A stretch of DNA of 64,000 nucleotides from Hemiscyllium ocellatum (GCF_020745735.1 NC_083401.1:77001740-77065739), one strand, 5' to 3'; counted from the stretch's first letter, positions 3,541 through 55,235 are shown. Program-made: numbers and translations. The notes: generated from the letters alone by a model not told the origin.

Positions 3541-3661
3541 GAATGTAGAACAGAAGATGTCACAGTTTTTGCATTTAGCTAACAGTATTTGCTCAATAGG
3601 ATTCATAATGGCCATTATATGATTTTAGCTTCTTGTTGGATCCTTATCTATAGCCCAGTTA

Positions 3662-9079: not shown

Positions 9080-9142
9080 TTACCACACAAAATCTAATCT
9101 CTACTTGGATATGGGTGATGATAAGTACATTTATTATTGAAG
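9080..9142 (+). CDS. Probable signal-peptide exon (TTQNLISTWIWVMISTFIIE-G)
   Basis: Acceptor attttacag|, donor GAAG|gtaagc. Phase 1-1, hydrophobic, and splices in frame to GELKLLC, like gp130 TWLVQ...TG|ELLDPC. Confidence 0.7.
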
Positions 9143-21100: not shown

Positions 21101-24100
21101 GTTCAAAGAAGAGATTTTAATAGCGTCTTGAAGGAGAAAAGAGAGAAAGACAGAGGGAGGTAGAAAGATTTAAGAGAGTGTTCTAGACGTTGGTAGCTGC
21201 AATCACAGCCACCAGTGAAAGTCAAGGATGAGTTAGATGCCAGAGTTTGAAATGTGCAGAGTTCTGAAAATATCAAGTTGATTCTGGTTATCGGAGGAAG
21301 GGAAACCCTGAAGACAACTGAAAACAGGAATGGGAATTTTAAAATTGAGGCAGTTCTGGAAGGAGCTAATGTAAGTTAATGAGGACGGGGTAATTAGGGG
21401 TAGAAGTTAGAGCATACTAAAATAGAAAAATAATACACAATAAATGGTATGTTACAGAGTAACTGAGGGATGGTGGAGTTCAAGTCCACAGATCACTGAC
21501 AGTAGTAGGACAGATAGTTACAGGAGTTAAGATGACAAACTGTATACTTTCCTTTAATAACTGAAGGTTTGGATGCAAGAATAGGGAGTTTAGAATAGCA
21601 TCAAACAATAGTTTGGCATGAACTAGAGTACTAGGTTCATACTGTAACTTCTTACAGGAAACATTTTATATAGAGGCTATGAAGGAAATTTATGAGGATA
21701 TTGCCAAGATTGGGGAATTTTGATTATGAAGAAAAATGAATAGGATGGTGTTGTTTACTGTGGAGAGAGGAAGCTAAGTGTAGTTTTAATTGAGGTGTAT
21801 AAAATTATATTGTATCTGGATAGAATGGATAGGAAGGACCTATTCCGCTCAGCAGAAAGGTCAGTAGTCGGGGGCATTGATTTAAAGAGTTGAAGAGAAA
21901 TCATTTTCTCTGAAAGATGGTAGGAATTTGAAACTCACGACTTCAATCAATGAAAGGGGTAAAAATACTCTTTGTATTTATAAATCTGTTTGGATGTGCA
22001 TTTGAAGCACAGTAACTTAAAGGACTACAGACCAAGCAGTGGAAAGTGGAATTAGGCTGGTTAACCTAATGTTGGCTGACCTAGAAATGATGGATGCAAG
22101 GGCCTCCTTTTATGCTGCAGATGTTCTGTTTGTATAGTCCCTGGTGTTGAGTCTAGAGATAAGAAAGACAGATAAGAATTTCAGCTGCAGAAGAGCTGAG
22201 TCAGGAAATTGGCGAAAGGATTCATCATGATTTACCATTGAAAGACCTTCAATTGCTGATACTTATAGCTTGCTGTTCAATATATCATTCAGTGACATTG
22301 TCCGGCAATACAGTTGATTTCCATCTGTACAATGTGACATGACTTTTTCTTTCAGTGCTATTTCTTTCTCTGAATGCACAGGTGAATTGAAATTGCTATG
22401 CCATCATGTTGATTCAACATCAAAAGTGGTTCAACTACAATCAAATATATCTCTGTCTTGTGCATTACGAGAGGAGTGCCTCCAGTTATTAGATGCAAAT
22501 GCAAGTCACATATTTTGGAGAATGAATGATACCCAAATTTCACGAGAACAATATTATTTCAATGCAACTGTTTCCTGGGTAACCTTAAAGAGGATTGATG
22601 CTTTAAGAACCTATTTGACATGTCACATTAACATCAAAGGAGCACCAAATATCCTTCACCGTTTTGAAATTAAAGCAGGCTGTAAGTATCTTTTCTGTAA
22701 CAATGTTTGTATTTCTTGCTAGGCTAGAATAAGGGCTCTAGGAAATAGAAATTCTAATATGGCTGATTAGAGCATGTGACCATATTTAATGTCAGTTTTC
22801 GTCGAATGAAACCTCATATAAAGAAATACCAAGTTCTGGGAATAATCCACATAATTATTAGTATCCCAGTAATATGTAAAACTTTGCTTTTGTGGTTGAG
22901 AATCAAAGGCTTGGATGCAGACAAAAAGTTTTCCCCAGTTCTCGCCCTATTGTGGTACATATAGGGTTAAGCTCAGATTCACTCAACAGGAATGTGCTGT
23001 CTTTGGCTGAGTCAGCATTTGTTGCCCATTCATAATTGCTGTGGAGAAGATTATGGTGATTTGATACAGTGACATCAGTTTATAGAGAATGGGTCCAAAA
23101 TTCCTTTTAGCTTAGGAGATGCAATTTGGATCCATGAGGCTTCCATTCCATTTAACTTATAATCCAACACTGTTTAAAGAGCCTTGATGAACCTCTTGCC
23201 TGAATTCCTCCTTCTTGTGGTGCAGGTTTGAACAGTTCTCAGGCTACTCAGAAAATTGGACTCATTGCTGTAGAAATCTGTTATAGCTGGTTTGTGCATG
23301 CAACATATAAAAATAAAGCCAAAAGTTTGCCAAATATCAAGCCACGTTGCTCAAAATGGATTGAACTGCAGCGTCAGAAAAGCCTTAGACTGCTCTAGAA
23401 AAAGGAAATCAAGAACAGAATAATGTAGCTGCTGGAAATCTGCAGTCTGAACATAAAATGCCAGAAATACTGAGAGGGTCTGGAGGAAGAACCTGAACTA
23501 ATGTTCCAGGTCAGTGACCTTCTGGTGAAAAGTTAATGGATTGAAAGGCCAATTCTGCTTTTCTCTCCATCAATGTTACCTGACCTGTTGAGTATTTTTA
23601 GCATTAGTAACCCCAGAGAGACAAAGTTTATGACCTTCTCCATGCTGTCACTTTAATGCTGCTTTTTGAGATGTCTTATCATAGCTTTGGTTCTTTCAGG
23701 TTCTATTCCTTCTCCATGGAAGGACCACAAATTTGTGGTGACTGAATGCAATCTGCTGCTGGAGTGGATATCTCCATTGTGCCTCCACATCATAGCCACA
23801 AATCATCTAATCACATATAGTAATAACCTTGTCTGAAGGCCAACAGAAGTCCCACTCAGCTACATTTGTTTTGCTGTTTATTCCTTAAACAGCATATTAC
23901 AAATTATGTATTCTACTATCTTCCGAAATCCAAGAAAGGTATATATGGTGTTGAACTAATAAGCATTTTCTGTTCAGTCCCTGGGTTCACTTCAAAATGG
24001 TAATTGTCCGATGTAAGGCACAAGACAGGGATTGAACACTGAATGTTGTGTACAGTTATGGCCTGAAATACTGATTACGAGAGAACAATCTTCGGGTACA

Positions 24101-39100: not shown

Positions 39101-42100
39101 GATATTGAATGCAAGTTCATGTGCAGGGCCATTACACTGGCAACATGAGCCCAACACTTCCAAAATGGCATACTTACAGGGTAAGCACTTACAATAACAT
39201 TAAAAGAGACTTTCTTTTTTATTTATTCATGGGATGTGGATGTCATTGACCAGGCCATTATTTATAGCCCATCTGTTATTGAGAGTCAATCATATTGCTG
39301 TGCATTTGGATTCATACATGGACCAGACTAGGTAAGGGTGGCATATTTTCTCCACTAAACAACATTAGTAAACTGACAATTTTTCCTGACAATTGGCAAG
39401 GGTTTTATGGTCATCTTTAGACCTGTAATCTCTGATTTTAAAAAGTTGAGTTCAAATTTGCCATGACAGGAATTGAACTCAGTCCCCAGAGCATTAGCTG
39501 GGTCTCTGGATTAATAGTCAAGAGTGTGGTGGTGGAAAAGCACAGCAGGTCAGGCAGCATCCGAGGAGCAGGAGAGTCGACGTTTCGGGCAAAAGCACTT
39601 GATGAAGGGCTTTTGCCTGAAATGTCGACTCTCCTGCTCCTCGGATGCTGCCTGACCTGCTGTGCTATTCCAGCACCACACTCTCGACTCTAATCTCCAG
39701 CATCTGCATTCCTTGCTTTCGCTGTCTGGATTAATAGCCCAGTGTTAATGTCACTAGGCTATCACCTTCCCTGTCTGGGTATTAGTCTACAATGAAATGA
39801 CCACTGTGGAGAATACACTGTGGAGAGAGACAGCTATTCCTTTCACCCCATTTCCATCTTTATTTCCTGAGGATGTTGACTTTTACTGGGATTGGGCTCC
39901 ATGGATCATTTGAAATTATACCTTCTTCTGGGTGAGCTGAAATGACCAGTAAGATTCATCAGTAATATTCTCACCTAATAACCACATAACAATCTTTTGA
40001 GGGTTCTCCAGACTGGCAAGCAGGGCTACTCATCTCAATTTCATCTCATCTCATTCTACTCACACCACTTCCATCGTGATGGCCATCAAATATAGAACAT
40101 AGAACAGTACAGCACAGAGCAGGCCTTTCGGCCCTCAATGGTATGCCAGGGGGATTGCACTCCTCTGTGACCTGACCACCAACTGTACTCCCATTTCCAA
40201 GTATGTATGTGCTGCCATTCTAACTTTCCATTGCTTATCAATGTCTTTGCAAATGCTGAATTTAATGTTGAACATTAGAGAACTCTGGAAAGCTTACCAA
40301 TAATGTTATTCTAAATAAAGCCATTAGAGTTGTAATAGATATTATACCATCAAGCCAGGGGTCAACTCTGGTTCAATAGAGAGTGCAAGACAGCATGGTA
40401 GGTTCAGCATAGAGATCAGAGTGGTGCTGGAAAAGCACAGCAGGTCAGGCACTATCGGAGGAGCAGGAAAATCGACATTTCGGGCAAAAGCCCTTCATCA
40501 GGAATCCATCAGGCATACCTAAGAATGAGCTGTCAACCTGTTGAAGCTACCAAACAGGACTATTTGCATGCCAAACACCATAAGCAACAAGTGATAGAGC
40601 TAAGAGACTTCCACACTAACAGATCAGTTCTAAACTCTGCAGACCTGCCATATCCAGTTATGAATGGTAGCAGACAGTTAAAAAATGCACTGGACGAGGA
40701 GACTCCACAAATATCCCCATCCTCGATGATGGAGGAGCCCAGTACATCAGTGCCAGAGATAAGGCAGAAGCATTTGCAACAATCTTCAACCAAAAATGCA
40801 GAGTAAAAGATGATCCATTCCAGCCTCTTCCAGTGGTCTCCAGCATTACAGATACCAGTCTTCAGCCACAAAAATGTAAATTGCTGGAGAAACGCAACAG
40901 TACTGACAGCATCTGTGGAGAGAAATGAGAGTTAACCCTTCGGGTCGTGTTGCGCCCTTCCTCAGGGTTGTGTACTAGATCCAGTTTTCAGCCAATTCAA
41001 TTCACTCCACTTGATATCAAGAAAGGAGTGGAGGTCCAGGATACTGCAAAGGTTACAGGCCTTGATAACATTCTGGCAATGATATTGAAGACTTGTGCTC
41101 CGGAACCTGCTTCTCCCCAGCCAAGCTGTTCCACTACAGTTACAACACTGGCATCTGCCCGACAATGTGGAAAATGTGATCTGTACAAGAACAGGAGGAC
41201 AAATCCAACTCTGCCAATTACCGCCCCATCATTCTACTCTCAATTATCAGTCGAGTGATGGAAGGTGTCATCAACAGTACTATCAAGCAGCACCTACTCA
41301 GCAATAACCTTCTCAGTGACACCCAGTTTGGGTTCTGCAGGTCCCAATCTCACTACAGCCTTGGTTCAAACATGGACAAAAGAGCTCAATTCCAGAGGTG
41401 AGCTGAGAGTGACAGCTCTTGACGTCAAGGCCAGATTTGACCGGGTGTGACATCAACAAGCCTTGGCAAAATCGGGGCAAACTCTCTGCTGGTTGGAATC
41501 ATACCTGACACTTAGGAAGATGGTTGTGGTTTTTGGAGGTCAGTCAACTCAGCTTAAGGAGTTCCTCAGGAAAAGGTCCTAGGCCCAACCATCTTCATCT
41601 GCTCCATCAATGACCTTCCCTCCATCATAAAGTCAGAGGTGGGGATGTTCACCAGTAATTGCACAGTGTTCAGGACCTTTTGTGACTCCTTAGATACTGA
41701 AGTAGTCCATGCTCAAATGCAACAAGATCTGGATGATATCCAGGCTTGGACTGAAAAGTGCCAGGCAATGACCATCACCAATAAGAGACAATTTAATCAG
41801 TGCCCCTTGATATTCAATGGTGTTGCCATCACTGAAACCCCCTATCAACATCTAGAGGTCACAATTGAGCAGAAACTCAACTGGACTCCCCACATGCACA
41901 CAGTGGCTACAAGAGCAGGTCAAAGGCAAGGCATACTGCAGTGAGTAACTCAACTCCTGACTCACCAAAGCCTATTCACCATCAGAAGCATGCTCCCCAA
42001 CTGCCTGGATGGATGCAGCTCCAACAGCACTCAGGAAGCTTGACACCATCCAAGACAAAATGGCCCACTTGATTGGCATAATATGCACAAATATCCACTC

Positions 42101-45100
42101 CCCCCAGCACTGACATTGTCACAAACCTGGTCCCTTTTTTCTCAAAGCTGTTCCTTTTCTCAAGGATACTGTGTCCTTGGTTTTTTTTTTCAGAGGGATT
42201 ATAAACAGCTTCCAGTTCTGATTAGACTGGTTTGATACAGAGATTGACAGATATTGAGAGGCCTTTTTGTTTATATGTAAACCAATGAGACCTCAGGCCA
42301 AAGTGGTCATGTTTTAGAAGTGACCTGTATAATGAAAGGGGAGTGGTCAGCTCTCTAGCTGAGCAGTTCAGTTCAGAACTAGTTGGAAGTTCAGCACTGG
42401 AGTGTGTGAACTGGCAACAAAAACTCTCTCTCCTTCTGCCCTTCTAACTTAAACCTGTAGACATTTGTTTCATTTTTACTGTTTTTTTTAAGGGGGTTTG
42501 CTTATTGAGACTGTGGTGTATATTTGGAACAGCATAATTAAATCAGAGTTCTGTAGGGGTCTTTCTTCTGTTCTTTGTGTTTCATTGTGTAATTTTGTGA
42601 ATAAAGTTTGTCTGTTTTAAAACCTGGTGGTCAACCTAGCTAACTTACTCTGGGTAATGTTCACTGTACACGTACCGAAACAAATTGCAAAGTTATGGTC
42701 TGGGCTGCCTGCTTAAGAATATTTTGAGTAGTCTGGCCGAGTTCATAACCCACTCAATAGCAACCATGTATACTACCTACAAGATTCACTGCAGAAATTC
42801 ACTAAGTTCACCTTTCAAACCCATGACCATTTCTTTCTAAAATGAAAAGGACAGCAGATACACCACCACCTGAAAGTTTCCATCCAAGCCACTCACCACC
42901 CTGACTTGAAAATATATCACCACTTCTTCATTGTCGCTGGGTCAAAATCCTGGAATTCGTTCCCTAAGGACATTGTGTGTATAACTGCAGCAAAGGGACA
43001 GCAATAGTTCAAGAAGGCAGCTCACCCCCACTTTCTCAAGGGCAACGAGGAACGGGCAATAAATACCAGTGACGCCCACATCCCACGAATGAAATAAAAA
43101 AAGTCTCCTTTTGATTTTAATTATTATTTTCATAATCACCTTAAGGAGCTGTTTACGCATTTTTTCTCTCAAGAGAGAGTTCCCAGCATTGAATTAAATA
43201 TGTGCCTGAGCGCACCCACTAAGTATGAATAAAGCTAACCCTGCAGAATCAGCTATGTGCAGCCTGCTGGCTGAGTTGGTACTAATAACTTACTGCTAAC
43301 TGATCAGAAAAAGCAAAGAACTGTGAATGCTGAAAATCAGAAAGGCAAACAGAAATTGCTGAAAAACTCAGCAGGTTTGGCAGCATTTGTGAAGAAACAC
43401 AGAGTTAACATTTCAGGTTTTTTTTTCTCTCTCTCTCTCTCTCTCCCTCTTATGGTCTCCATTAATAGTTATTCATTCTCCCAGGCTGATCTGTACCTGT
43501 TCCTTTTTCCTTTCTCTGGGCTCTATCTCCACCTATTGTTTTTTCCTTGCCTCTCCCTCCGAGCTACTATCAGTTCTGAAGAAGGGTTATTCGTTCCGAA
43601 ACATTAACTGTGCTGCCAGACCAGTTAGGTTTTTCCAACAATTTCAGTTTTTGTTGCTGCTAACTGATGCTTGATTGGAAAATCTGTACTTATGTCTAAT
43701 TTAGCGGACATACTCGAAGCGCATTTTTATGAGCTTGAACAACTACACCCATTCTTAATGCACATTTAAATAAAATGTGAATGTAAAATAATAAAAGTGC
43801 TTAAGAAATGTTAGTCTATTTGCAATCGTCTTCCAAACTTGTGGACTTTAAGAGAGTAGAAATTACAGATTACTTTTTATAGCAGTTTGTTTATTATCAA
43901 ATCTGAGACCATAGTATTCCCACTTATATACTTTAATGAACATGCTACAATATTTTTAATTGATTAATATAAAACAAAGATGAGAGTCTACCCAATGTAT
44001 CTTCTCATCTACATCAGTTTGTTGTAAAACAGGCAGCTACAGCTCGAATTAACTTCTCCTCAGTTGTTCGGAGTATAATGATATAAACAATTCAGCAGGG
44101 TTGAGATGTCTGTGAAGACTCATAATGAGTCTGCTGATTAATGTCCTTTTGTTTGGAACAGCGACTATCACAAATGTGTGGTTCTAGATTAGTGAGAAGG
44201 ATCAAGCAATGCATTGCATACACTATTGTAAAGAATGTGACGAGTTAAAGTTTGAGCATGACATCTACATTTTGTTTTTTAATGCTGAAAGTAAAGTGCA
44301 TAAGAATCTTCATGAGCTGCACATTTCCCCTTTGTTGATTTTTTTTCACAGGAGATTTAGAAAAGTTTAAGCGCTATAACATCTCTGTTTATGCTGTGTA
44401 CACTGATGGCGCTGGAAATCCATTCTCAATACCGGCATACCTACAGCAAGATAGTAAGTAAATATTCAAGGATTTAACAGCTAATAAGAGACTTTCCAAA
44501 GGCCTTGATTTCAGATAGTTTATATAAATTTGATTAAACAGCAGAGAGGAGGCTATATCCTCTATTGTATTGCCAATTTACAAATGCAGCTTGTAAAATT
44601 GGCCTTGTTCAAATTTTCTATTTCCTGACCTTAAAAACTGGATATACTCTAGAAAGTTTAAAACCTTTTTTATTTCTGAATAGTTAAAATTATTTATTTG
44701 TAATCCTGTCTCCTAGTATTATTATACACAATAATAATGAGTCCTTGATTAAATTACAAATACAACATTGTATTTCTTATGTGGAAATATGATTTTTCTC
44801 ATTGATTTGTTACTTTACCTGGAGTAGCTATGTAAATACTGTAGCTATAAGAACAGATCAGAGGCTTGGGATCTTGTGGAGAGTAACTCACCTCCTCCTG
44901 ACTCCCCAGACTTTGTCCATCATCTAAAAGACACAAGTCAGGAGTATGTTGGAATACTCCCCAGATGTCTGGTTGAATGCAGCTCCTACAACATGTTTGA
45001 CACCAACCAAGTCATAACAGCCCACTAATTGGCACCACGTACCCAAACATTAACTCCGTGCACCACTGCTACACAGTAGCTACAATGTGTGCCATCTACA

Positions 45101-48100
45101 AGATGCATTGCTGTAATTCATCAAGGCTCCTTCAACGACACCTTCCAAACCTGTGACTTGTACCAACTGGAAGGACAGGACAGCAGCTACTTGGGAACAC
45201 CAGTAATTACAAGCTCCCCTTCAAATCACAAATCTTGACTTGGAAATATATCACTGTTCCTTCACTGCCACTGGATCAAAATCCTGGAACTCCTCCACCA
45301 ATAGCATTCTTGTTGGACCTACATTAAAAGGACTGTTCAAGAGGGCAGCTCACCACCACCTTCTGCAGGGCAAGTAGTCTAATGAACAAATTTTATTTGC
45401 CAACAGTGATGGCATCCTATGAAAGGATTATTTTAAAAATTGTTAATCATATTTTGATCAGATCCTAACACAAAGAATGCATTCCTTTTAATGGGCAAAG
45501 AAATAAAATTCACTTTGAAAAATAACATGACTGACTTATTAGATCTGATTTTAATTATTAAAACCGATCCACATTAACCAGGTTAAAATTGGGCCCATCT
45601 TGTTCTGTAATAGTGGAGGTGATTGCTATATTCGTTTAATATGTTCCTGGCAAATGAGTGGGATAAACGTAAGTTGAGCTGATATGGTGTTACGAGGCTG
45701 TTGAATGCTGTTACCTGGAAAATCCCATGGCAATGTCATGTAAGACTACACACTCTCTGTGCTGAATACTAGTGAAAGTGAGAAGGGTAAAAACATCTCT
45801 GATTCTAAATGAATAAATGTTAAGGATTGTTAGTGTTCGCTGCTTGTTCAATGAAGATTTTCTTTATCAGTTCCAGAAGTAGGCCCAATTATTGATGCTC
45901 CACTTGCGAGAGAAACAGAATGCACAATTAAATGGCATGAAATCCCAGTGGAAAAGAGGCGTGGATTCATCACCAATTACACCATTTTTTACAAATCTGC
46001 AAAAGGCGAGGCAGGTAAGTGTGCTTTTTCAAGGAGTCTTGTAAACAAATAAATATGAGGGCACAGTCATATCCATATCATTGCTGCAGCAATTGCTCCA
46101 GTATTGGCGTGTACATTCACTATCATTTATATGTTTCCTGCGTATGAACTATTCTACCCTTCTGAAACTCTCTTCGTACTGGTTAACTTGTTGGCTAATT
46201 GGCCGGACCATGGTACAGATGATGTCAACAGCATGGATCTCAATCCCTGTATCAGCTGTGGTAGTTCCTTGTCATGCCCCATGTTTGATGCAGTGTGATA
46301 CCTCTCAAGCTATACAGCCATTTGTCTGTAACAGAGAGAAATGTTTATGGTCCATTTACCTCAACTAAACCTGTAGTCTCTTTGTGAGGTTTTTGCAGTG
46401 AGTCTGTCCTCTGCTCCCACATGTTTTGACTGCTGGTGTTCACAGATCTAATGAGACACGTACATAAGGTGGTTAAAAGGCATTTCAGGTACACTGCTTA
46501 GAGGAGGCATAGAATGCAGTAGCAAGGACTTTACGCTGGAACTCTATATGATGCTAAACCAGCCCAGTTATGGTAATCATCACCACGAAGGATATGATGA
46601 CACTGGAAAAACATAGAGTTTTACCAAGGATTGAAGAATTTTAATTGAAGAAAGAATGAAGAGGCTGATGTTGTTTGTTTTGGAACTTATTGATATATAA
46701 ATAAACTATGAGGACCTGAGACGGTGTGGATGGAAATGACCTATTTCCCTTAGTAGAGAGGTCATTAACCAAGAGTGGAATTTAAAGGATTAAGGATTAA
46801 CACAGAAGGAATAAGACGGAAACAAGGTGAACATTTTGTCACTCAGAATCTGGAGGGCCTATAACTCACTGACTGAAGGGCTGCCGAGACAGAAACATTT
46901 AACAGTACATGGCAATACTCTTGAAGTGCTCTGCACTATAGCACAAGGAACTATAAGTGCTAATGGCCTCCTGTGTGGTGATTTTTTTGAATAAATGATC
47001 CTACAAATTCGTAAAATGAACACTATATTAAACATTATTGTTGCACACAGAGACGTCTTCACAAAACTCTCTTGGACAAAGGTTTACTGCCTTCTAATAA
47101 TGTTTTCCATTATTTCGCAGGTGTAACAGTGAATTCAACAGTCCATGAATATACACTGAAATCTCTGCAAAAGAATACTGATTACACATTTTATGTTATG
47201 GCATCCACTGTGAAGGGAAGCATGAACAGCACGTTGAATTCCTTCACAACAAATGCTCTTGGTCAGTGAAAAAAACTTCGAAAAAGTTCAATGTTACTTT
47301 ATTCCTGAGTTGTGTTTGTGTCAAGGACTGAAACCAGCTATGGTGTTCCCCTGCCAAGCCAACTTTCCTGACCTATAAAGCTAACACGCATCCCTAATAG
47401 GCCTGTGTGCCAGGGCTGACTTTAAAGTGATAGACCTTGTGTTCCCTGTGATTTCTTGGGTCTCATTCCCTTTACTGAAGGGAATGGTGCATGTTTGTGA
47501 CAGAAGAGGTGAATTTCAGATTTTATCAGTGTCAAATTGCCATCAGGAAATGGAACTGAATAGAGCCTATTTGCATAAAAAAGGTACCAGTCCCTGTTTC
47601 CGCACACCACCTTAAATTGTGGACCTATTTCTAATTACAATCCACAAAGCAGATTAATGCATTCTAACTTCTTTAAAAATATTACATTTCATTATATTTG
47701 TAGTCATTTGACTGAGAATTTATGCATATTCAGTTATGGCAGTGTTCTGCAGATGTTGCAAGATTCAAACACTATTTCAAAATAATTGACATTCCCATGA
47801 GATCAAGTATTTTATGAGTTTAGCAAATGAACATACAAACACACAAATTAGGAGCAAGAGTAGGCCACTTGGCCTCTTGAGCCATCTCCACCATTCAACA
47901 GGATCATAGCCGATCTGATTCCAGATCCACATTCCTGCTTTACCATAAGAACCTTTCATCCCCTTGCTTGTTAAGAATCTATCTACCTGTACTTTATAAA
48001 GACTCAAAGACTCTAATTTCACCTTATTTATCGAGGAAAAGAGTTCTAAGCATTCATGTCCCTTTGTGAGACGAAGGTTTCTGCTAATCTCTATTTTTAA

Positions 48101-51100
48101 ACAATGACCACAAGTGGAAAAATCATTTCCATAATCATCTGATCCTCAGGATCTTTTATGCTTCAAATAATTTGCCTCCTACTCTTCTAAATTTTAATGG
48201 GAACAACCTTAGCCTGTCCAAACCTCTCCTCATAGGGCAAATGGTCCATTCCAGCTATTAGTTCAGTAAACCTTGTCTGAACCATTTTCCCTTCAAACAA
48301 GAAGCAGTGTAACCTGGTTTTGCTGGATGCCGGACGTTAAGGAATTGCTATTTTCATTTTCATTTATATAAGTTGGTCAACACAGTCACTTAATATCAAA
48401 TTATAGACTATTTTTAAATCTACATGTATGGTATTGGCTGAAAAATTGTGTTCTGTGAATATAAATGTTAAATTTCTGATCTGTGGAATTCATGTTTTGG
48501 ATATCATAAACCAAAAATTTAAGTCATTCAAAATAGTTGATTAATAGGTTTCAAACAATAGGTATTATTATTTGTGTGGCAATGGCAAACCTTTAGAGAG
48601 TTTGTTTAAATGTTCAGAATTTTCAGCATTTTCTGGTAAGACATTCAATGCCTGCAAATGGAACAAAATGGCAGAAAACAAAATGCTGTGGGAAGTTTTG
48701 CTGAATCTAAATAGAAATACAAGCATTATATGTTGCTGATCAGAGTTGTGACTGGTATTGCTTCAAAGTAATATCTAGTTTATAATTTTATTACAGGGCA
48801 AAAAGATATTGTGGTGATTCTGGTGCCTGTTCTCGTCATCTTCCTACTGCTAGTAAATATGTTGATAATCTGTTTCAACAACAAGCATAGGTTAGTATGT
48901 TAACTCTTAATGTTTTGAGTTCCAAGTACCAGAGGTAAGTTCCGGCCATCAGCATTCAAGGCAGAAAAATTCACACACAGTACATATGGACAAATCAAAA
49001 ATGGGTTTGATTTTCCATCAACTCAATTCTGTAGGTGTGAACACTGAATAGTACCTGCCCAAATTTCCATTGCATATTCCCTGCATGTGGAGCTCTGTAC
49101 TGGCAACATTGAATATGAACGTGTATATAATTTAAAGGTTGACATATTACAATATTTTGTGGCATTGCAACATGTATCACATGAAGCATGAGGATTAGGC
49201 TGTGGGTTGTGATCTGGAGTATCTTGATCTCGGCAATCAGTGCAGGAACTGCTGACTGTGCTTCCAACATTGGAACCTCATTCTCTTGTAGGATTTTGTC
49301 CAGGGCCACCCTGAGGGCAGACATAATGAGGATGCATAAAATTGTGTATAGACAGGGTAGATGGTAAGGGATAAATGACCAGGGGCATACCTTTAAGGTT
49401 AGGGGGCAGGACGTTCAGAGGAATGTGAAGGGATGCTATGGACCAAGTGCTGGAAATTGGGATTAGAATAATTGGTCATTTTTGACCAGTGTAGACTCGA
49501 AGGGATGAAGGGCCTTTTTTGGTGCTGTTAACCTCTATGGTTCTATGACTATATGACTCTATATGGGTGCTAGGAACCAAAAAGAAACAAGTGTAGGGTG
49601 GAAGGTGGTCGTACTTTAAGGAGGGGGATACTCTGGAGCGGTTTGTTTTTCTTTGACTTGGTCTCCCAATAGCGTCCATACCACACTGAATATCTTAAAA
49701 TATCAAACTTAATGTAAGTGTATACTTATGTTGGAGGAGACAGTGATATCATGGTAAGATTATGTGACTAGTAATCTAGAAATAGGCTAATGCTCAAAGG
49801 ATGTGTGTTTGAAGTGCAACATGGCAGATTGTGAAATTTGATTTCAATAAAATCTGGAATTAAAAATTTTAATAACAATCATAAAACTGTTGTTGATTGT
49901 CATTTAAAAAAAAAAGACCATGTGCGCCACTAATACCATTTAGGGAAAGAGATTTGGCATTCTAATGTGCTCTGGCCTGAAAGTGACTCCAGACCTATCA
50001 ACACTGTCCACATTCGTCCCTTTGCCATCAACGTGCAGTGGCAGTAATGTTTACCATCGACAAGATGTATCTTTAACAGCACGTTATAAGCATGTGACCT
50101 CTTGTACCTGGAATGATAAAGGTAAAAGAGGCATGGGACCCCCACCACCATCATGCTCCCTCCCTCAAGCTGCATTCCATCTTGTATTGGAATTACATTC
50201 CTCCTCCTTCAGTGTCACTGAGCCAAAATCTGGAACACCCTCACTAACAGGGTGATGTTAAATGTCAAAAAAAAGCTAAAGTTAGTATTTTGTATCTGCC
50301 ATCAATATTATAGAGTATGTCTCCACTCATTTTGAATGACAATCAAGTATAGAAATGGCATTTGAAATACACTGCAGCCATGGTTTGTTTTGTCATTTGA
50401 AGGATGTACAGCTGTAATTGTTACCTCTGACTCTTAGGATTGCAAAACACATTTGGCCTGACGTGGCAGATCCTGCAGGTAGCAGTTTAGCTGATTGGTT
50501 TCATGAACATCAATACAAGGTATACCTTTCTCCTTTTATGTCTTTGACTTGTAGAGGTTTAATTTGGTACAGAAGTAAAAAATATTGGAAATTCTCTGTA
50601 GGCGAGACACCGTTTGTAAGAGGGTTAGCATTTAAAATCAATAGTCTTGTTTTTTTTTTCACTTAACCCAGTGTTTTGCTTTTATTTTAAGTTGATGTTT
50701 ATCTTTGTTACATTTTGGAAAGGAATTCAATCAGTAGCAAAATTCTCTGCTTGCTCCATGTTTCTACAAATTTTAAATTCCTACTTTGAAATGATTTTAA
50801 TTTAAAAAGTCATCATAATCCTTATGGCAGCTTAGCTTCTGATCTTCTTTAATTGCACTAATACTTGGTGTCATCTTGCGATCTGTCACTAAAATAAAAG
50901 CAGTGATTGAACTATTAGTCACACTTCAATTACTTTTATATTTTTCCTAAGCAACACATCTTTCATTGTCTTGACTTCACTTTACTGTTTAATGTGAGCA
51001 TCTCTTTAATTTACTGTTTGTGCTTGCATCACCACGTGCTGGAATGCTATAGGAACAAAGGAGTGTAGGATTAGGAATAGGCCATTCAGTCTGTTGAGTT

Positions 51101-54100: not shown

Positions 54101-55235
54101 GATGAACTGATTTTTAATCAGTAAGGGAATCCAGCAATATGGGGAAAGAGGCAGAAAAGTTGGATTGAAGTTTATCAGATCAGTCATGATCTCCTTGAAT
54201 GGCAGAGTAGACTCTATGGATGGAAGGACCCACTTCTGCTCCTATATCCTATGATCTTAGGTGTATTTTGCCTCTTGAGATTAGCATTTGCCAGTTAGCG
54301 CTAAAACAAAGAAGCAACTGATTTCTACCAAAATTAATTTTGGATTGTGCTGACTTTGCTGAGCATGGTAAAGGTAGTGGCATGAATTTGAAATAAAATG
54401 ACAGCTGGTTTAGCCACAAACTCTGGGCGATGATCAATGGTGATGTCTGGGTAGGTAGTGGCAATGGGAATTTCGGCAGTTATACAAAGTATCTGAATGG
54501 TGGCAGTACTGAAATAATAAGAATGTTATGCTACCAGATGGAATAACTTTTCCTTTCTTTTTCAAGAATGATCAAACCCCAAAAATACTGAATCCAGGAA
54601 AAGACCACTACACCGACATCAGCACAGTTGAAGTCTTATATCTGCCTGAGGAAAGCCAGCTACAGTCCATAAAGAAAGACCTGACTTCACATCTACACAC
54701 AGTGGAAGTGGAATGTCCCCCTACTGTGCCTCCCCATCATGAGACCGCATCAAATGGTGAAGAGACCAAGTTGTTACAGCAAACAGATACAGTTGTGTAC
54801 ACAGTCTTAGAAGAAGGCTACAAGAGTCAAATCCCTGACTTCAGCCGGTCATTGTCAAAGCAGCCACTACTTTCAAATACTTCAGAAAAGAGTACAAGTG
54901 ATCATGGAACTGAAATAAGTGCACTTGATGGAGTTGAAGAAAATTGGTGTCCACAAAATACTGATGAAAATGATGTATTTCAACAAATAACTAAAATCAA
55001 CTCATACTTGAATAACTCCTTACAGATGACTGAGTCAAAAATTGCATTGGATTCAGATAGCTCAAGCAATTCTTCAATTGATAGCTCCTGTAAAGAGGGC
55101 ACGAAAGTGCAAGGAGATGCTGGAACTGTCAATGTGAATCCACAGAGTTCTCCTCAAGATAACCAGCCGAATAACCCAGTGCAAACTTACATTACAGTGC
55201 AGTTACTTGGATTAATGTTAAACAATGAAATGTAA
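9080..55235 (+). CDS. il31ra: gp130-family type I cytokine receptor, IL31RA-like/IL6ST paralog (15 coding exons, ~893 aa, start codon not found)
   Basis: Join 9080-9142,22382-22681,24923-25043,29898-30061,31513-31670,33801-33951,36198-36280,38112-38328,38989-39180,44352-44453,45871-46014,47121-47261,48797-48890,50438-50519,54567-55235 gives one open frame (2681 nt) with GT-AG introns. Domain order: signal, Ig, CBM (4 Cys, WSQWS), 3xFNIII, TM, Box1, Box2, Tyr motifs. The family call is strong. The il31ra symbol is tentative and rests on recalled motifs (KTDPP..ILG..W.KP.MAP; PAGSSLADW; NSYLNNSL). Confidence 0.85.
9343..9462 (-). mobile_element. Penelope terminal-repeat fragment (degenerate hammerhead)
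   Basis: tgcagatgctgg...aaagcacagcag...ggcagcatc... matches the terminus of the Penelope element at 61976-62106. Confidence 0.8.
9748..10095 (+). mobile_element. HE1/V-SINE, older copy
   Basis: A/B boxes plus tgtgtggagtttgcatattctcccc core. Confidence 0.85.
10343..11096 (-). mobile_element. CR1 LINE 3' fragment
   Basis: 205-aa ORF (LEYCVQFWSP...LERRRLRGDLIE) and (tatgactc)n tail. Confidence 0.93.
11465..13228 (+). mobile_element. CR1 LINE ORF2 (RT), frameshifted and 5'-truncated
   Basis: DFSKAFDKVP, GVPQGS and FVDD motifs spread over three broken frames. Confidence 0.93.
13646..17640 (-). mobile_element. Near full-length CR1 LINE: ORF1 (Zn-finger/leucine zipper + SGNH esterase) and ORF2 (APE endonuclease + RT), decayed
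   Basis: CRMWEV...YICGKC...IRELELELDEL; GEGEQPQVVVHIRTNDIG; YRPPNS...MGDFNYP...SDHN; [12 protein letters not shown]; (ttctatg)n tail. Confidence 0.93.
14085..14197 (-). mobile_element. Penelope terminal fragment inserted in the CR1 ORF2
   Basis: Near-identical to 61977-62088 and 57343-57455; interrupts the CR1 RRFTRMLPGM coding segment. Confidence 0.9.
18898..20660 (+). mobile_element. Young 5'-truncated CR1 LINE with uninterrupted 560-aa RT/C-terminal frame (18898-20580)
   Basis: [40 protein letters not shown]; 3' UTR and (ttctatg)n tail; no endonuclease domain. Confidence 0.96.
21420..22130 (+). mobile_element. Highly decayed CR1 3' fragment
   Basis: Degenerate CR1 text (...ttaattgaggtgtataaaattat...; ...aaggactacagaccaagcagtggaaagtgg). 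Confidence 0.6.
22382..22681 (+). CDS. Ig-like (D1) domain exon
   Basis: GELKLLCHHVDSTSKVVQLQSNISLSC...NASHIFW...REQY...LTCHI...AG aligns with gp130 D1 (GELLDPCG...VVQLHSN...NANYIVW...KEQY...LTCNI). Splice sites cacag| and |gtaagt. Confidence 0.92.
23425..23605. mobile_element. Old head-to-head Penelope terminal palindrome
   Basis: gctggaaatctg...aatactgagagggtctgg arm and inverse ...cctgacctgttgagtatttttagcatt arm. Confidence 0.55.
24168..24293 (-). mobile_element. Penelope terminal fragment with hammerhead-like motif
   Basis: Reverse complement reads gtt-ctgagga-agggtcactggaccc-aaaac-gtg-aac. Confidence 0.75.
24923..25043 (+). CDS. Cytokine-binding module exon 1 (LPPDKPKNISC...FTCSW...RETHLKTNFTL)
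   Basis: tttcag| and |gtgagt; C-x9-C-x-W signature; phase 1-2. Confidence 0.95.
26005..26740 (+). mobile_element. tRNA-headed LINE 5' portion (same family as 5270-7505)
   Basis: Head (...aattcagaggcccag...ttctggttcact...) followed by sequence matching 7060-7200 in reverse. Confidence 0.6.
26745..28900 (-). mobile_element. Decayed CR1 ORF2
   Basis: VTNGVLQGSVLGTQLF remnant and surrounding degenerate RT/EN text. Confidence 0.7.
29003..29138. other. Assembly gap (136 N)
   Basis: Run of N. Confidence 1.
29898..30061 (+). CDS. Cytokine-binding module exon 2 (...VEAQNALGKVSS...)
   Basis: tttacag| and |gtaatt; second Cys pair and VEA-NALG motif; phase 2-1. Confidence 0.93.
30225..30770 (-). mobile_element. 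CR1 3' fragment
   Basis: ELRRMRSDLIET and FKTEMRRNFF remnants; interrupted by the HE1 at 30774. Confidence 0.8.
30774..31085 (+). mobile_element. HE1 (V-SINE), young copy
   Basis: Nearly identical to 4606-4920; (tctaag)n tail; possible agtatt target duplication. Confidence 0.92.
31513..31670 (+). CDS. Cytokine-binding module exon 3 (WKTDPPWNVTV...LLVTWCKPKMAPP...KWIQ)
   Basis: atacag| and |gtacac; phase 1-0; start of an FNIII fold. Confidence 0.92.
33135..33240 (+). mobile_element. Penelope terminal fragment with degenerate hammerhead
   Basis: ctgaaaagggtcattcaacccgaaacgttaactc...gatgctgccagacctgctg. Confidence 0.75.
33330..33662 (+). mobile_element. tRNA-headed SINE (head joined directly to the LINE-type tail)
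   Basis: A/B-box-like head (tgtagtgataatg...agttctaatccc) followed by gttcaagggcaattggggatgg tail. Confidence 0.65.
33801..33951 (+). CDS. WSxWS exon (LKPFTNYTVAVRC...YWSQWS)
   Basis: ttcttag| and |gtatgt; WSQWS encoded at 33906-33920. Confidence 0.96.
34440..35660 (-). mobile_element. Decayed PIF/Harbinger (HARBI1-like DDE) transposase
   Basis: Broken frames YPGSCHHSFIL, GWLLG, RYNIAHSSTRT and LLKM...LQYDPYRVCCII match Harbinger nuclease motifs (YPGSVHD, WLLGD, RYN.AH..TR, LK.RF...LQY.P). Confidence 0.8.
36198..36280 (+). CDS. FNIII exon (NPLTGPSIWRKI...GKRKVHVQWK)
   Basis: tttgcag| and AAG|gtagct; 83 nt; phase 1-0. Confidence 0.93.
36445..37050 (+). mobile_element. Decayed Penelope element with two tandem terminal repeats
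   Basis: CKDSIP...LCHICSD...ASKMSS parallels CKNSIP...LRRICSQ...AQMAS of the ORF at 63012-63482; hammerhead-like termini at ~36804 and ~36933. Confidence 0.7.
38112..38328 (+). CDS. FNIII exon (ALNRSKANGIILGY...VIAYNSAGDSPEATL)
   Basis: gttgcag| and |gtatgt; phase 0-1. Confidence 0.95.
38989..39180 (+). CDS. FNIII exon (DDLPAVQDI...GYVIEWC...LHWQHE)
   Basis: Polypyrimidine tract plus aaag| (an alternative in-frame acceptor starts at 39001); donor |gtaagc. Confidence 0.92.
39215..39770 (-). mobile_element. tRNA-headed SINE interrupted by a Penelope palindrome
   Basis: Reverse strand has an A box (tagcctagtga), a B box (gagttcaattcc) and the LINE-type tail. Confidence 0.7.
39518..39724. mobile_element. 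Head-to-head Penelope terminal palindrome with 13-bp target-site duplication
   Basis: About 80-bp inverted arms; tctggattaatag at 39505-39517 and 39725-39737. Confidence 0.88.
40410..40505 (-). mobile_element. Penelope terminal fragment with near-intact hammerhead core
   Basis: Reverse complement attc-ctgatga-agggcttttgccc-gaaat-gtc-gatt. Confidence 0.85.
42117..42750 (+). mobile_element. Probable solo LTR inserted in the LINE
   Basis: Starts TGTCACAAAC and ends GTTCATAAC; internal TATA-like and AATAAA motifs; the host LINE resumes after it. Confidence 0.55.
43305..43656. mobile_element. Penelope inverted-terminus insertion with 12-bp target-site duplication
   Basis: ctgctaactgat at 43293-43304 and 43657-43668; hammerhead-like cagtt-ctgaaga-...-gaaac-att-aactg at 43571-43610. 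Confidence 0.8.
44352..44453 (+). CDS. FNIII exon (GDLEKFKRYNISVYAVY...AYLQQD)
   Basis: ttcacag| and |gtaagt; phase 1-1. Confidence 0.94.
44820..45430 (+). mobile_element. 3' fragment of the CR1/L2-group LINE family
   Basis: ...ggaatactcccc...gcagctcctacaac...caaaatcctggaactcc...gcagctcaccaccaccttc. Confidence 0.7.
45871..46014 (+). CDS. FNIII exon (IPEVGP...WHEIPVEKRRGFITNYTIFY)
   Basis: ttatcag| and CAG|gtaagt; GFI-NYTIFY motif typical of the gp130 family. Confidence 0.95.
47121..47261 (+). CDS. Last FNIII exon (VTVNSTVHEYTLKSL...VMAST)
   Basis: ttcgcag| and |gtcagt; phase 1-1. Confidence 0.94.
47830..48300 (-). mobile_element. CR1 3' fragment, decayed
   Basis: gagtaggccacttggcctcttgagcc... 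3' UTR and VDRFLTSKGMK remnant. Confidence 0.65.
48797..48890 (+). CDS. Transmembrane exon (GQKDIVVILVPVLVIFLLLVNMLIICFNNKHR)
   Basis: ttacag| and |gttagt; 23-residue hydrophobic stretch; phase 1-2. Confidence 0.94.
49735..50250 (+). mobile_element. tRNA-headed element with internal deletion (head + LINE 3' part)
   Basis: Same head as 26005 and 33330, followed by ...taccatcgacaagatg...cagtgtcactgagccaaaatctggaac. Confidence 0.6.
50438..50519 (+). CDS. Box1 exon (IAKHIWPDVADPAGSSLADW...)
   Basis: ctcttag| and AAG|gtatac; aligns with gp130 IKKHIWPNVPDP. Confidence 0.94.
52168..52628 (+). mobile_element. CR1 LINE 3' fragment
   Basis: MLPGLED...ERLRGDFIDVYK; (tatgactc)n tail; same subfamily as 10343-11096. 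Confidence 0.9.
52742..53360. mobile_element. Second Penelope-like family: inverted terminal copies
   Basis: caggttatagtccaacaggtttatttggaagtacaag (52757-) is the reverse complement of cttgtacttccaaataaacctgttggactgtaacctg (53265-); degenerate ctggcga-aggagcagcgctct-gaaa motif. Confidence 0.7.
53545..54255 (+). mobile_element. Decayed CR1 3' fragment
   Basis: DLIKTYKILGEIDRIDVE remnant. Confidence 0.75.
54567..55235 (+). CDS. Terminal cytoplasmic exon (Box2-like TDISTVEV; YTVL; YKSQ; YLNN; YITV)
   Basis: Polypyrimidine tract plus caag|; 222 codons to TAA; non-repetitive ORF. Confidence 0.92.
   Translation, partial: NDQTPKILNPGKDHYTDISTVEVLYLPEESQLQSIKKDLTSHLHTVEVECPPTVPPHHETASNGEETKLLQQTDTVVYTVLEEGYKSQIPDFSRSLSKQPLLSNTSEKSTSDHGTEISALDGVEENWCPQNTDENDVFQQITKINSYLNNSLQMTESKIALDSDSSSNSSIDSSCKEGTKVQGDAGTVNVNPQSSPQDNQPNNPVQTYITVQLLGLMLNNEM

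What the first reader, a model, noticed from the sequence alone, without database searches (positions are those of the whole stretch)
9080..55235. gp130/IL31RA mosaic receptor: IL31RA-like body that still carries the gp130 Ig (site III) domain
Seen: a complete Ig-CBM-3xFNIII-TM receptor. Known: human IL31RA is a gp130 paralog adjacent to IL6ST that lacks the N-terminal Ig domain. From recalled human sequences, several segments are closer to IL31RA than to gp130: ISCISYWRVNFTCSW vs ISCVYYYRKNLTCTW; KTDPP..ILG..R...W.KP.MAP vs KTEPP..VLG..R...W.KPELAP; PAGSSLADW vs PAESSIATW; NSYLNNSL vs NPYLKNSV. D1, RETHLKTNFTL and KHIWP are gp130-like. Inference: this may be an ancestral-state IL31RA, or a cartilaginous-fish gp130 paralog. 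With the Ig domain it could engage a cytokine site III and serve an uncharacterised IL-6-family ligand.
Basis: partly seen in the sequence, partly recalled or inferred. Interest (0 to 1): 0.8.

Follow-up and report, generated by a model that had tools for sequence, protein, structure and literature searches.

The report
Shark IL31RA orthologue with Ig domain
This is an intact 15-exon shark gene for the counterpart of IL31RA, the mammalian itch-cytokine receptor; like the bird, reptile and amphibian versions it keeps the N-terminal Ig domain that mammals lost, so it is an ordinary gene that public annotation calls 'IL-6 receptor subunit beta-like'.

Summary
On the + strand, 9080-55235, 15 GT-AG exons splice into an uninterrupted 892-codon reading frame. 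It encodes signal peptide, Ig D1, cytokine-binding module (four Cys, WSQWS), three FNIII domains, TM, Box1 and a 222-residue tail. The N gap lies in an intron and hides no coding sequence.

The product is 95.7% identical, without indels, to the Chiloscyllium punctatum RefSeq protein 'interleukin-6 receptor subunit beta-like'.

It is not a recombinant mosaic, and it is not the shark gp130.
- In an outgroup-rooted ML tree the chondrichthyan clade is sister to bony-vertebrate IL31RA (95/96).
- A separate gp130 clade already holds nine chondrichthyan gp130s.
- The tail carries the IL31RA-only motifs (NPYLKNS-like, C-terminal YxTx) and none of the gp130-only ones.
- In the sawfish the orthologue lies tail-to-tail with il6st, at most 88 kb away.

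The Ig domain is normal for IL31RA in birds, turtles, alligator, tuatara, geckos, amphibians and sturgeon. Only mammals and some squamates lack it.

Verdict: this is the shark IL31RA orthologue in the ancestral architecture, a new member of a known kind. Its ligand is unknown. Caveat: AU tests reject the gp130-sister alternative only marginally.

The parts
9080..9142 (+). Coding exon 2: the signal-peptide hydrophobic core. It starts in phase 1. The ATG plus one base lies on an upstream exon that was not found.
   Evidence: Splice sites and frame. Collinear with residues 3-22 of P0032, which begins M-F-T.
22382..22681 (+). Ig-like domain D1 exon, 300 bp, phase 1/1 (a symmetrical cassette). All four ancestral cysteines are present, at 22399-22401, 22459-22461, 22477-22479 and 22621-22623.
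   Evidence: Pfam PF06328 E 5e-17. PDB gp130 D1 E 6e-13 and G-CSFR E 4.5e-5. Cysteine pattern. dN/dS 0.39 against sawfish.
24923..25043 (+). D2 exon a (N-terminal half of the cytokine-binding module, first Cys pair).
29003..29138 (.). Assembly gap (N), intronic. Not part of the CDS and left untouched.
   Evidence: for position. Searches show no residues are missing across the exon junction that spans it.
29898..30061 (+). D2 exon b (second Cys pair).
31513..31670 (+). D3 exon a. This is the most IL31RA-like segment when compared with human structures.
   Evidence: IL-31RA 30.9 bits, human gp130 13-14 bits.
33801..33951 (+). D3 exon b, with WSQWS at 33906-33920.
36198..36280 (+). FNIII D4 exon a.
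38112..38328 (+). FNIII D4 exon b.
38989..39180 (+). FNIII D5 exon a.
44352..44453 (+). FNIII D5 exon b.
45871..46014 (+). FNIII D6 exon a.
47121..47261 (+). FNIII D6 exon b.
48797..48890 (+). Transmembrane exon. The TM helix is at 48808-48876.
50438..50519 (+). Box1 exon. IWPDVADP lies at 50451-50474, with the middle Pro replaced by Ala.
54567..55235 (+). Last exon: a Box2-like stretch and the signalling tail. Motifs: VVYTVL 54792-54809; YKSQ (YxxQ) 54819-54830; di-leucine SKQPLL 54855-54872; NSYLNNS 54999-55019; YITVQ 55188-55202; stop 55233-55235.

Best explanation
The window holds the shark orthologue of IL31RA, the gp130-like receptor that sits next to il6st.

WHAT IT ENCODES. It encodes a 'tall' class I cytokine receptor in the ancestral architecture: Ig-like D1, a cytokine-binding module (D2-D3, four Cys plus WSQWS), three membrane-proximal FNIII domains, a TM helix, Box1/Box2 and a tyrosine-bearing tail.

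WHAT IS SHOWN.
- An intact, spliceable gene.
- Purifying selection on all exons, including the Ig exon.
- Orthologues across sharks, rays and a chimaera.
- A sister relation to bony-vertebrate IL31RA.
- IL31RA-type tail motifs.
- Tandem position with il6st in a ray.

WHAT IS INFERRED BY HOMOLOGY. The D2-D3 elbow binds a four-helix IL-6-family cytokine at its site 2, as human IL-31RA does with IL-31 (PMC13587731). Box1/Box2 hold a JAK. The phosphorylated YKSQ, NSYLNNS and C-terminal YITV tyrosines recruit STATs. SKQPLL drives internalisation. A LIFR/OSMR-type partner probably supplies site 3.

WHAT IS UNKNOWN. The role of D1 is not known: a site 3 contact, as in gp130 and G-CSFR, or none. The ligand is not known either; IL-31 has not been described in fish (PMC4929537).

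EVOLUTION. The Ig-less form of mammals is the derived state. The Ig exon is a phase-1/1 cassette whose in-frame skipping is already predicted in a skate isoform.
For: GENE INTEGRITY. 15 GT-AG exons and an open frame. 95.7% identity with no indel to the RefSeq protein of C. punctatum. dN/dS 0.40 overall and 0.39 for the Ig exon against the sawfish orthologue.

PHYLOGENY, careful IQ-TREE with LG+C20 PMSF, 54 rows, rooted on CSF3R, IL12RB2 and an unnamed fish clade.
- The chondrichthyan clade holding the window is 100/100.
- It is sister to osteichthyan IL31RA (bichir, sturgeon, coelacanth, amphibians, sauropsids, mammals) at 95/96.
- The gp130 clade is 100/99 and contains 9 chondrichthyan gp130s.
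- The quick tree with another row set gives the same topology at SH-aLRT 92.
- With CSF3R as the only outgroup, support is 99.

AU TESTS.
- 'Window clade outside IL31RA+gp130' is rejected, p 0.0027.
- 'Window clade with gp130' is rejected on D1-D3, p 0.017.
- The same alternative is marginally rejected with the CSF3R outgroup, p 0.043.

DISCRETE TAIL CHARACTERS.
- NPYLKNS-like motif: 75/95 IL31RA, 12/15 of this clade, 0/134 gp130, 0/8 outgroups.
- C-terminal Y[VIL]T[VL][DEQH]: 59/95, 13/15, 0/134.
- gp130's YSTV and terminal YxPQ: 130/134 in gp130, 0 in this clade, 0 in IL31RA.

SYNTENY.
- In Pristis pectinata CM019856.1 the orthologue is on + at 50,335,021-50,387,793. gp130 is on - at 50,476,170-50,505,824. 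They are convergent with at most 88 kb between them.
- Orthologue and gp130 share a chromosome-sized contig in 7 species.
- IL31RA and IL6ST are likewise linked in sturgeon and Ascaphus by adjacent accessions.
- DDX4 lies directly upstream of IL31RA in birds, shown by read-through models.

IG DOMAIN IN IL31RA. PF06328 is listed for bird, turtle, alligator, gecko and amphibian IL31RA. The start of D2 lies about 117-152 residues in for those and about 20 residues in for mammals.
Against: - With all outgroups and the full length, the alternative 'sister to gp130' is only 12.4 lnL units worse and is not rejected (p-AU 0.10).
- The D4-D6 partition on its own puts the clade with gp130 (SH-aLRT 98). 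Holding it with IL31RA there is not rejected (p 0.26).
- Rooting with IL12RB2 alone leaves the node unresolved, and removing long-branch rows destabilises the outgroup.
- Raw similarity is slightly higher to shark gp130 (37%, 466 bits) than to Ambystoma IL31RA (32%, 418 bits). This fits the slower evolution of gp130.
- The tandem position was shown in a sawfish, not in the window's own genome. The window's flanks hold only transposon remains.
- The protein searches depend on shared 5-mers. They cannot exclude a second, more IL31RA-like gene in sharks, nor a bony-fish member of this clade.
- I could not read Table S2 of PMC12284397, so I do not know what label those authors gave the bamboo-shark gene.
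Confidence: 0.85

Rival explanations
1. An old gp130-side paralogue. The clade would be sister to IL6ST, not to IL31RA. It would be kept only in cartilaginous fishes, which would then have lost the true IL31RA.
For: - The alternative topology is not rejected on the full alignment (p-AU 0.10).
- The D4-D6 tree groups the clade with gp130.
- Identity is higher to gp130 in D3-D5, TM/Box1 and the tail.
- RefSeq names it IL6RB-like.
Against: - It is rejected on D1-D3 (p 0.017) and with the CSF3R outgroup (p 0.043).
- The best trees give IL31RA as sister at 95/96.
- The tail has IL31RA-only motifs and lacks all gp130-only motifs.
- It needs two duplications and two losses, where orthology needs one duplication and none.
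- The gene occupies the IL31RA position next to il6st.
Confidence: 0.08
2. A true mosaic. This would be an IL31RA orthologue whose membrane-proximal FNIII region (D4-D6), or whose D1, was overwritten by gene conversion from the neighbouring il6st.
For: - The two genes are tandem neighbours.
- The D4-D6 partition tree differs from the D1-D3 tree.
Against: - In D4-D6 the clade is sister to all gp130s, bony and cartilaginous. It is not nested with shark gp130, as a conversion in the shark lineage would make it.
- The conflict is not significant (p 0.26). It has the look of long-branch attraction, with the fast IL31RA rows falling stepwise towards the outgroup.
- D1 groups with IL31RA D1, not with gp130 D1.
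- Per-domain identities show no sharp switch.
Confidence: 0.04
3. An out-paralogue from the second genome duplication, namely the 'IL6RBL' of Gong et al. [quoted passage not shown]
For: - PMC12284397 describes such a gene class in the same clade as IL6ST and IL31RA.
- The RefSeq name 'IL6RB-like' is the same wording.
Against: - Placing the clade outside IL31RA+gp130 is rejected (p-AU 0.0027).
- The gene is linked to il6st, not on another paralogon.
- No ray-finned member of the clade was found. The bichir and sturgeon relatives fall with IL31RA.
- The other C. plagiosum protein named 'IL6RB-like', on a 51.7-Mb chromosome, is CSF3R.
Confidence: 0.02
4. A decaying or mis-assembled locus: the Ig exon is not used, or the gene is a pseudogene.
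For: - The start codon exon was not found.
- An assembly gap lies inside the locus.
- A skate isoform skips the Ig exon.
Against: - The frame is open through all 15 exons.
- All splice sites are canonical.
- dN/dS is 0.39 on the Ig exon.
- Only 3 of 100 residues in the Ig exon differ from C. punctatum, against 38 of 892 overall.
- The gap is intronic.
Confidence: 0.01

Closest known systems
IL31RA (GPL, gp130-like receptor) of tetrapods
   Same: - Sister clade in the rooted tree.
- CBM plus three FNIII, TM and Box1.
- Tail motifs NPYLKNS-like and C-terminal Q-x-Y-[VIL]-T. YKSQ is shared with salamander IL31RA.
- The same neighbour, il6st.
- An Ig D1, as in bird, turtle, crocodilian, tuatara, gecko and amphibian IL31RA.
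   Different: - Mammalian, snake and iguanian IL31RA lack D1.
- Tetrapod IL31RA D1 has lost the first and third cysteines. The shark protein keeps all four.
- The shark tail keeps the S-x-Q-P-L-L di-leucine motif seen in gp130 and CSF3R but not in the tetrapod IL31RA rows inspected.
- The window's copy has NSYLNNS where most have NPYLKNS.
- The ligand is unknown; IL-31 has not been described in fish (PMC4929537).
gp130 / IL6ST
   Same: - Identical domain order: Ig-CBM-3xFNIII-TM-Box1/2.
- Four-Cys D1 as in bony-vertebrate gp130.
- One YxxQ and the di-leucine motif at equivalent tail positions.
- Best PDB hits for the D1 and D2a exons.
   Different: - It falls outside the gp130 clade, which has its own shark, ray and chimaera members.
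- It lacks YSTV (the SHP2/SOCS3 site), YFKQ and the two terminal YxPQ motifs, which are present in 130/134 gp130s.
- About 37% identity to shark gp130.
RefSeq 'interleukin-6 receptor subunit beta-like' models of sharks, rays and chimaera (e.g. P0032 C. punctatum, P0024 Pristis, P0001 Mobula, P0036 Callorhinchus)
   Same: They are direct orthologues: 46-96% identity, the same length and the same exon order.
   Different: Only the name differs. The automatic name points to gp130, while the evidence here points to IL31RA.
CSF3R (G-CSF receptor)
   Same: - The same tall architecture with an Ig D1.
- The second-best PDB family for D1.
- It shares the 'PA-S' stretch after Box1 and the STQPLL motif.
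   Different: It is an outgroup in all trees. The shark CSF3R is a separate gene (P0302).

Membership tests
IL31RA | Groups with IL31RA, to the exclusion of IL6ST, in an outgroup-rooted phylogeny. | tested here: met
   Support 95/96 in the careful tree, 92 in the quick tree and 99 with the CSF3R outgroup. The alternative topologies give p-AU 0.10, 0.043 and 0.017 for sister-to-gp130, and 0.0027 for placement outside both. This is moderately, not overwhelmingly, decisive.
IL31RA | Lies in tandem with IL6ST (ddx4 - il31ra - il6st - ankrd55 block). | tested here: inconclusive
   Met for the sawfish orthologue: convergent with il6st, at most 88 kb away. Orthologue and gp130 share a chromosome in 7 species. 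This was not testable in the window's own genome. No ddx4 or il6st exon lies in the window's flanks.
IL31RA | IL31RA-specific cytoplasmic motifs: NPYLKNS and a C-terminal Y-[VIL]-T-[VL] motif. | tested here: met
   The window has NSYLNNS and YITVQ. The motifs occur in 12/15 and 13/15 clade members, in 75/95 and 59/95 IL31RA, and in 0/134 gp130.
IL31RA | Absence of an N-terminal Ig domain (the textbook, mammalian definition). | tested here: not met
   D1 is present. The feature does not define the family outside mammals and some squamates.
IL31RA | Binds IL-31 at site 2 and signals with OSMR. | not testable with these tools
   This is known for the human receptor (PMC13587731). No shark ligand or partner was examined.
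gp130 / IL6ST | Falls inside the IL6ST clade. | tested here: not met
   The gp130 clade is 100/99 and excludes it. Nine chondrichthyan gp130s are inside that clade.
gp130 / IL6ST | Tail with YSTV (SHP2/SOCS3 site) and membrane-distal YxxQ/YxPQ STAT3 sites. | tested here: not met
   Only one YxxQ (YKSQ) is present. There is no YSTV and no terminal YxPQ.
gp130 / IL6ST | Ig-CBM-3xFNIII ectodomain. | tested here: met
   This architecture is shared with IL31RA (non-mammalian), CSF3R and IL12RB2, so it does not discriminate.
IL6RBL (Gong et al. 2025, PMC12284397) | [quoted passage not shown] | tested here: not met
   The gene is linked to il6st. Placement outside IL31RA+gp130 is rejected. No ray-finned member was found. 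Their accession table could not be read.
CSF3R / IL12RB2 / IL23R | Groups with one of these in a phylogeny. | tested here: not met
   They form the outgroup side of the tree.

The most novel reading that the evidence does not exclude
Shark IL31RA is a working orphan receptor. It has an intact four-Cys Ig D1, a YxxQ site and a gp130-type di-leucine motif, and no IL-31 is known outside mammals. It could therefore serve an as yet unidentified IL-6-family cytokine. It would use D1 for a site 3 contact, in a gp130- or G-CSFR-like higher-order or homodimeric assembly, rather than the mammalian IL-31/OSMR site 2-only mode. Regulated skipping of the phase-1/1 Ig exon, predicted in a skate, would switch between the two modes.
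Probability: 0.2. Interest if true: 0.6.

Novelty: new member of a known kind. Interest (0 to 1): 0.3.

Why it matters
The finding corrects a name. The shark, ray and chimaera genes that RefSeq calls 'IL-6 receptor subunit beta-like' are best read as IL31RA orthologues.

It places the il6st/il31ra tandem duplication before the split of cartilaginous and bony vertebrates.

It also shows that the Ig-less IL31RA of textbooks is a derived mammalian (and partly squamate) state. The ancestral receptor looked like gp130.

That sharpens a modest open question: what is the ligand of IL31RA outside mammals, where IL-31 has not been described, and does its D1 take part in binding? For the scan this is an ordinary, intact, already-modelled gene, not a new kind of receptor.

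Tried and rejected
1. Neighbour genes. I looked for them in the window's flanks using ORF lists and tblastn with a bird DDX4-IL31RA read-through protein. Only LINE and Penelope remains turned up, with no ddx4 or il6st exon.

2. Coordinates of both genes in more species.
- Isoform X2 proteins are not on record.
- S. torazame, C. plagiosum and Mobula gave no coordinates.
- Amblyraja gave the gene but no neighbour within 10 kb.
- Only Pristis gave both positions.

4. Supplement Table S2/S3 of PMC12284397 is not held, so I could not see how those authors labelled the bamboo-shark genes.

5. The ESM Atlas search returned cluster names only, with no usable ids for outgroups.

6. Earlier scan notes held nothing on il6st, ddx4 or related genes in this genome.

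7. Rooting with IL12RB2 alone, or after removing the long-branch basal IL31RA rows, was uninformative or unstable.

8. A candidate one-residue indel before WSXWS shared by this clade and IL31RA is not clean, because the chimaera and sturgeon lack it. I dropped it as evidence.

9. I considered gene conversion with il6st and rejected it (see rival explanations).

10. I did not run a structure prediction. Fold identity was already clear from sequence, and a model would not discriminate between the candidate families.

11. The spliced protein could not be handed to the database tools because it has no single reference. The close orthologue P0001 and the individual exons were used instead.

Full report
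1. WHAT IS IN THE SEQUENCE

The window is AT-rich vertebrate DNA (40% G+C) with one run of N at 29003-29138. Stop-free segments on the + strand between 9 kb and 55 kb contain the hallmarks of a class I cytokine receptor.

I chose splice sites by requiring AG/GT borders and compatible phases. This gives 15 exons that join into one open frame of 892 codons ending at the stop 55233-55235.

The domain order is:
- signal-peptide core;
- D2 and D3, two exons each, with four cysteines in D2 and WSQWS in D3;
- three FNIII domains, two exons each;
- a TM helix;
- Box1 (IWPDVADP);
- a last exon with a Box2-like stretch and a 222-residue tail.

Pfam recognises the Ig exon as Lep_receptor_Ig (E 5e-17), and the other exons weakly as cytokine-receptor or fn3 pieces.

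2. THE ASSEMBLY GAP AND THE START CODON

The gap lies in the 4854-bp intron between exons 24923-25043 and 29898-30061, next to a LINE reverse-transcriptase fragment.

The spliced protein aligns to P0032 over all 892 residues with 38 substitutions and no indel. P0032 is the C. punctatum RefSeq protein 'interleukin-6 receptor subunit beta-like isoform X2'. No coding exon can therefore be hidden in the gap. I left the gap as it is.

P0032 starts M-F-T, and the window's exon at 9080 starts in phase 1 with TT. So 'ATG' plus one base sits on an upstream exon that I could not locate.

The 95.7% identity says the window comes from a close relative of Chiloscyllium punctatum.

3. RELATIVES

An HMMER search of the Ig exon against 1.8 billion representatives returned 23 hits. 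The best was a full-length Mobula protein, P0001.

Using P0001 as a query found orthologues in sharks, rays and the elephant fish. All are named 'IL-6 receptor subunit beta-like', at 46-96% identity to the window's protein.

Further searches with a shark gp130 (P0038) and with salamander IL31RA (P0048) gave:
- the true gp130 of 13 chondrichthyans;
- about 90 IL31RA sequences;
- the outgroups CSF3R, IL12RB2 and LEPR.

One C. plagiosum protein also named 'IL6RB-like' (P0302) turned out to be the shark CSF3R.

4. PHYLOGENY

Without an outgroup the family forms three clades that meet at one node: IL31RA of bony vertebrates, the chondrichthyan clade holding the window, and gp130.

Rooted on CSF3R, IL12RB2 and an unnamed fish clade, the careful tree (54 rows, 944 columns, LG+C20 PMSF) shows:
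- the window's clade joined to IL31RA at 95/96;
- an order inside that clade that follows the species tree (chondrichthyans; then bichir, sturgeon, coelacanth, tetrapods);
- a gp130 clade at 100/99, with chondrichthyan and bony members as sisters.

AU tests:

| Alternative held | Data | lnL difference | p-AU |
|---|---|---|---|
| Window clade outside IL31RA+gp130 | full length, all outgroups | 18.7 | 0.0027 |
| Window clade with gp130 | full length, all outgroups | 12.4 | 0.10 |
| Window clade with gp130 | full length, CSF3R outgroup only | 17.7 | 0.043 |
| Window clade with gp130 | D1-D3 only | 18.0 | 0.017 |

Partition trees:
- D1 goes with the D1 of non-mammalian IL31RA (support 79).
- D2-D3 goes with IL31RA (99).
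- D4-D6 goes with gp130 (98). There the fast IL31RA rows fall stepwise towards the outgroup, and holding the clade with IL31RA is not rejected (p 0.26).
- The TM/tail partition is noise.

Rooting with the very long IL12RB2 branches alone leaves the node unresolved.

So the tree favours IL31RA orthology. It excludes a lineage-specific gp130 copy and an out-paralogue. It leaves 'ancient sister of gp130' only weakly alive.

5. INDEPENDENT CHARACTERS

The tail settles much of the remaining doubt. Proteins of at least 700 residues were sorted into families by best BLAST hit.

| Motif | IL31RA | Window's clade | gp130 | Outgroups |
|---|---|---|---|---|
| NPYLKNS-like | 75/95 | 12/15 | 0/134 | 0/8 |
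| C-terminal Y-[VIL]-T-[VL]-[DEQH] | 59/95 | 13/15 | 0/134 | 0/8 |
| YSTV | 0 | 0 | 130/134 | 0/8 |
| Terminal YxPQ | 0 | 0 | 130/134 | 0/8 |

The window has NSYLNNS and YITVQ. YKSQ is shared with salamander IL31RA.

The S-x-Q-P-L-L di-leucine motif and the 'PA-S' stretch after Box1 also occur in CSF3R. They are therefore ancestral.

6. POSITION IN THE GENOME

In Pristis pectinata chromosome CM019856.1:
- the orthologue lies on the + strand at 50,335,021-50,387,793;
- gp130 lies on the - strand at 50,476,170-50,505,824.

The two genes are tail to tail, at most 88 kb apart.

Other linkage evidence:
- The orthologue and gp130 sit on the same chromosome-sized contig in Mustelus, Heptranchias, Heterodontus, Cetorhinus, S. 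torazame, Narcine and Pristis.
- IL31RA and IL6ST are likewise neighbours in sturgeon and Ascaphus, shown by adjacent accessions.
- Bird read-through models put DDX4 directly upstream of IL31RA.
- A synteny paper lists ddx4-il31ra-il6st-ankrd55 in gar and other fishes (PMC9222667).
- From my own knowledge, not tested here, human IL31RA and IL6ST are also convergent neighbours.

Reconciliation points the same way. Orthology needs one duplication and no loss. Either alternative needs two duplications and two losses.

The window itself contains no neighbouring gene, so its own synteny remains to be checked.

7. THE IG DOMAIN IS NOT AN ODDITY

PF06328 is recorded for IL31RA of birds, turtles, alligator, geckos, an amphisbaenian and amphibians.

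The D2 start motif shows where the Ig domain is present:
- It lies 117-152 residues from the N terminus in those groups and in sturgeon.
- It lies about 20 residues in for mammals and 32 in for snakes.
- Iguanian models also lack D1.

The Ig-less receptor is thus a derived state.

Evidence that the shark Ig exon is a functional coding exon:
- The shark D1 keeps all four ancestral cysteines. Tetrapod IL31RA D1 and, notably, shark gp130 D1 have lost the first and third.
- The Ig exon is under the same purifying selection as the rest of the gene (dN/dS 0.39 against 0.40, window versus sawfish).

A predicted skate isoform (P0030) joins the signal exon directly to D2. This is an in-frame skip of the cassette exon and reproduces the mammalian architecture.

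8. HOW IT MOST LIKELY WORKS

By homology, the D2-D3 elbow binds site 2 of a four-helix IL-6-family cytokine, as in the human IL-31/IL-31RA/OSMR complex (PMC13587731). A LIFR/OSMR-type partner would supply site 3. Box1/Box2 would hold a JAK. The tail tyrosines would recruit STATs.

These steps are inferred, not shown. Box1 has Ala for the middle Pro in elasmobranch orthologues but not in the chimaera; the effect of this is unknown.

The ligand is unknown, since IL-31 has not been described in fish (PMC4929537). Whether D1 makes a site 3 contact, as in gp130 and G-CSFR, is open.

9. COMPARISON WITH WHAT IS KNOWN, AND VERDICT

The gene is modelled in RefSeq for many relatives under a gp130-like name. 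The IL6ST/IL31RA pair is treated as an old local duplication in PMC12284397 and PMC12162339. I found no paper that describes the shark gene or the Ig-bearing state of non-mammalian IL31RA, but the facts are plain in public annotation.

I file it as a new member of a known kind, with low-to-moderate interest. Its first reading (ancestral-state IL31RA) is supported. Its mosaic framing is not.

Noticed in passing
L002:10001-69253 (Heptranchias perlo CM068637.1, 65.49-65.55 Mb); proteins P0121/P0063 and P0185 (Mustelus asterias): There is a third gp130-family gene in sharks, on the same chromosome as gp130 and the IL31RA orthologue. It is short (608-650 aa), has no Ig domain (signal peptide joined directly to D2), and has a degenerate Box1 and almost no tail. 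It is sister to chondrichthyan gp130 (93/91) on a long stem. It could be a decoy or short-form gp130 duplicate specific to cartilaginous fishes.
   Followed up: partly
protein P0302 (Chiloscyllium plagiosum, contig of 51.7 Mb) and P0190 (Cetorhinus): A RefSeq protein named 'interleukin-6 receptor subunit beta-like isoform X2' is in fact the shark CSF3R orthologue. It is 64% identical to Cetorhinus 'G-CSF receptor-like' and groups with bird CSF3R at 99/96. The same automatic name therefore covers three different shark genes.
   Followed up: yes
protein P0030 versus P0026 (Amblyraja radiata; locus L004): Predicted isoform X2 of the skate orthologue joins the signal-peptide exon directly to D2. 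This is an in-frame skip of the phase-1/1 Ig exon and gives the mammalian-type Ig-less architecture. The window's Ig exon (22382-22681, 300 bp) has the same symmetrical phases.
   Followed up: partly
alignment of D1; shark gp130 proteins P0038 and P0157: Chondrichthyan gp130 D1 lacks the first and third cysteines, which bony-vertebrate gp130, CSF3R and the window's protein keep. Tetrapod IL31RA D1 lost the same pair. The N-terminal D1 disulfide was therefore lost at least twice.
   Followed up: no
window 50451-50474: Box1 reads IWPDVADP, with Ala in place of the middle Pro. The same change is present in the Carcharodon and Pristis orthologues and in Callorhinchus gp130. The Callorhinchus orthologue has the canonical WPNVPDP.
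   Followed up: partly
window 18898-20580 (+), also 10430-11047 (-), 11978-13125 (+), 13739-16283 (-): Intron 1 (13.2 kb) is packed with LINE remains, including one uninterrupted 560-aa reverse-transcriptase ORF. Similar RT fragments lie in other introns and in both flanks.
   Followed up: no
window 62239-63482 (-): Two adjoining ORFs of a Penelope-like element: an RT C-terminal part and a GIY-YIG-type endonuclease motif.
   Followed up: no
proteins P0234, P0237, P0238, P0260 (birds, turtle): Some RefSeq models named 'DDX4' or 'IL6RB-like' are read-through fusions of DDX4 (N-terminal about 570 aa) with a complete IL31RA. They are useful as evidence of adjacency but are annotation artefacts.
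   Followed up: partly
window 1-9079: The first coding exon (ATG plus one base, with the 5' UTR) of the gene was not found. It may lie in the first 9 kb or upstream of the window.
   Followed up: partly
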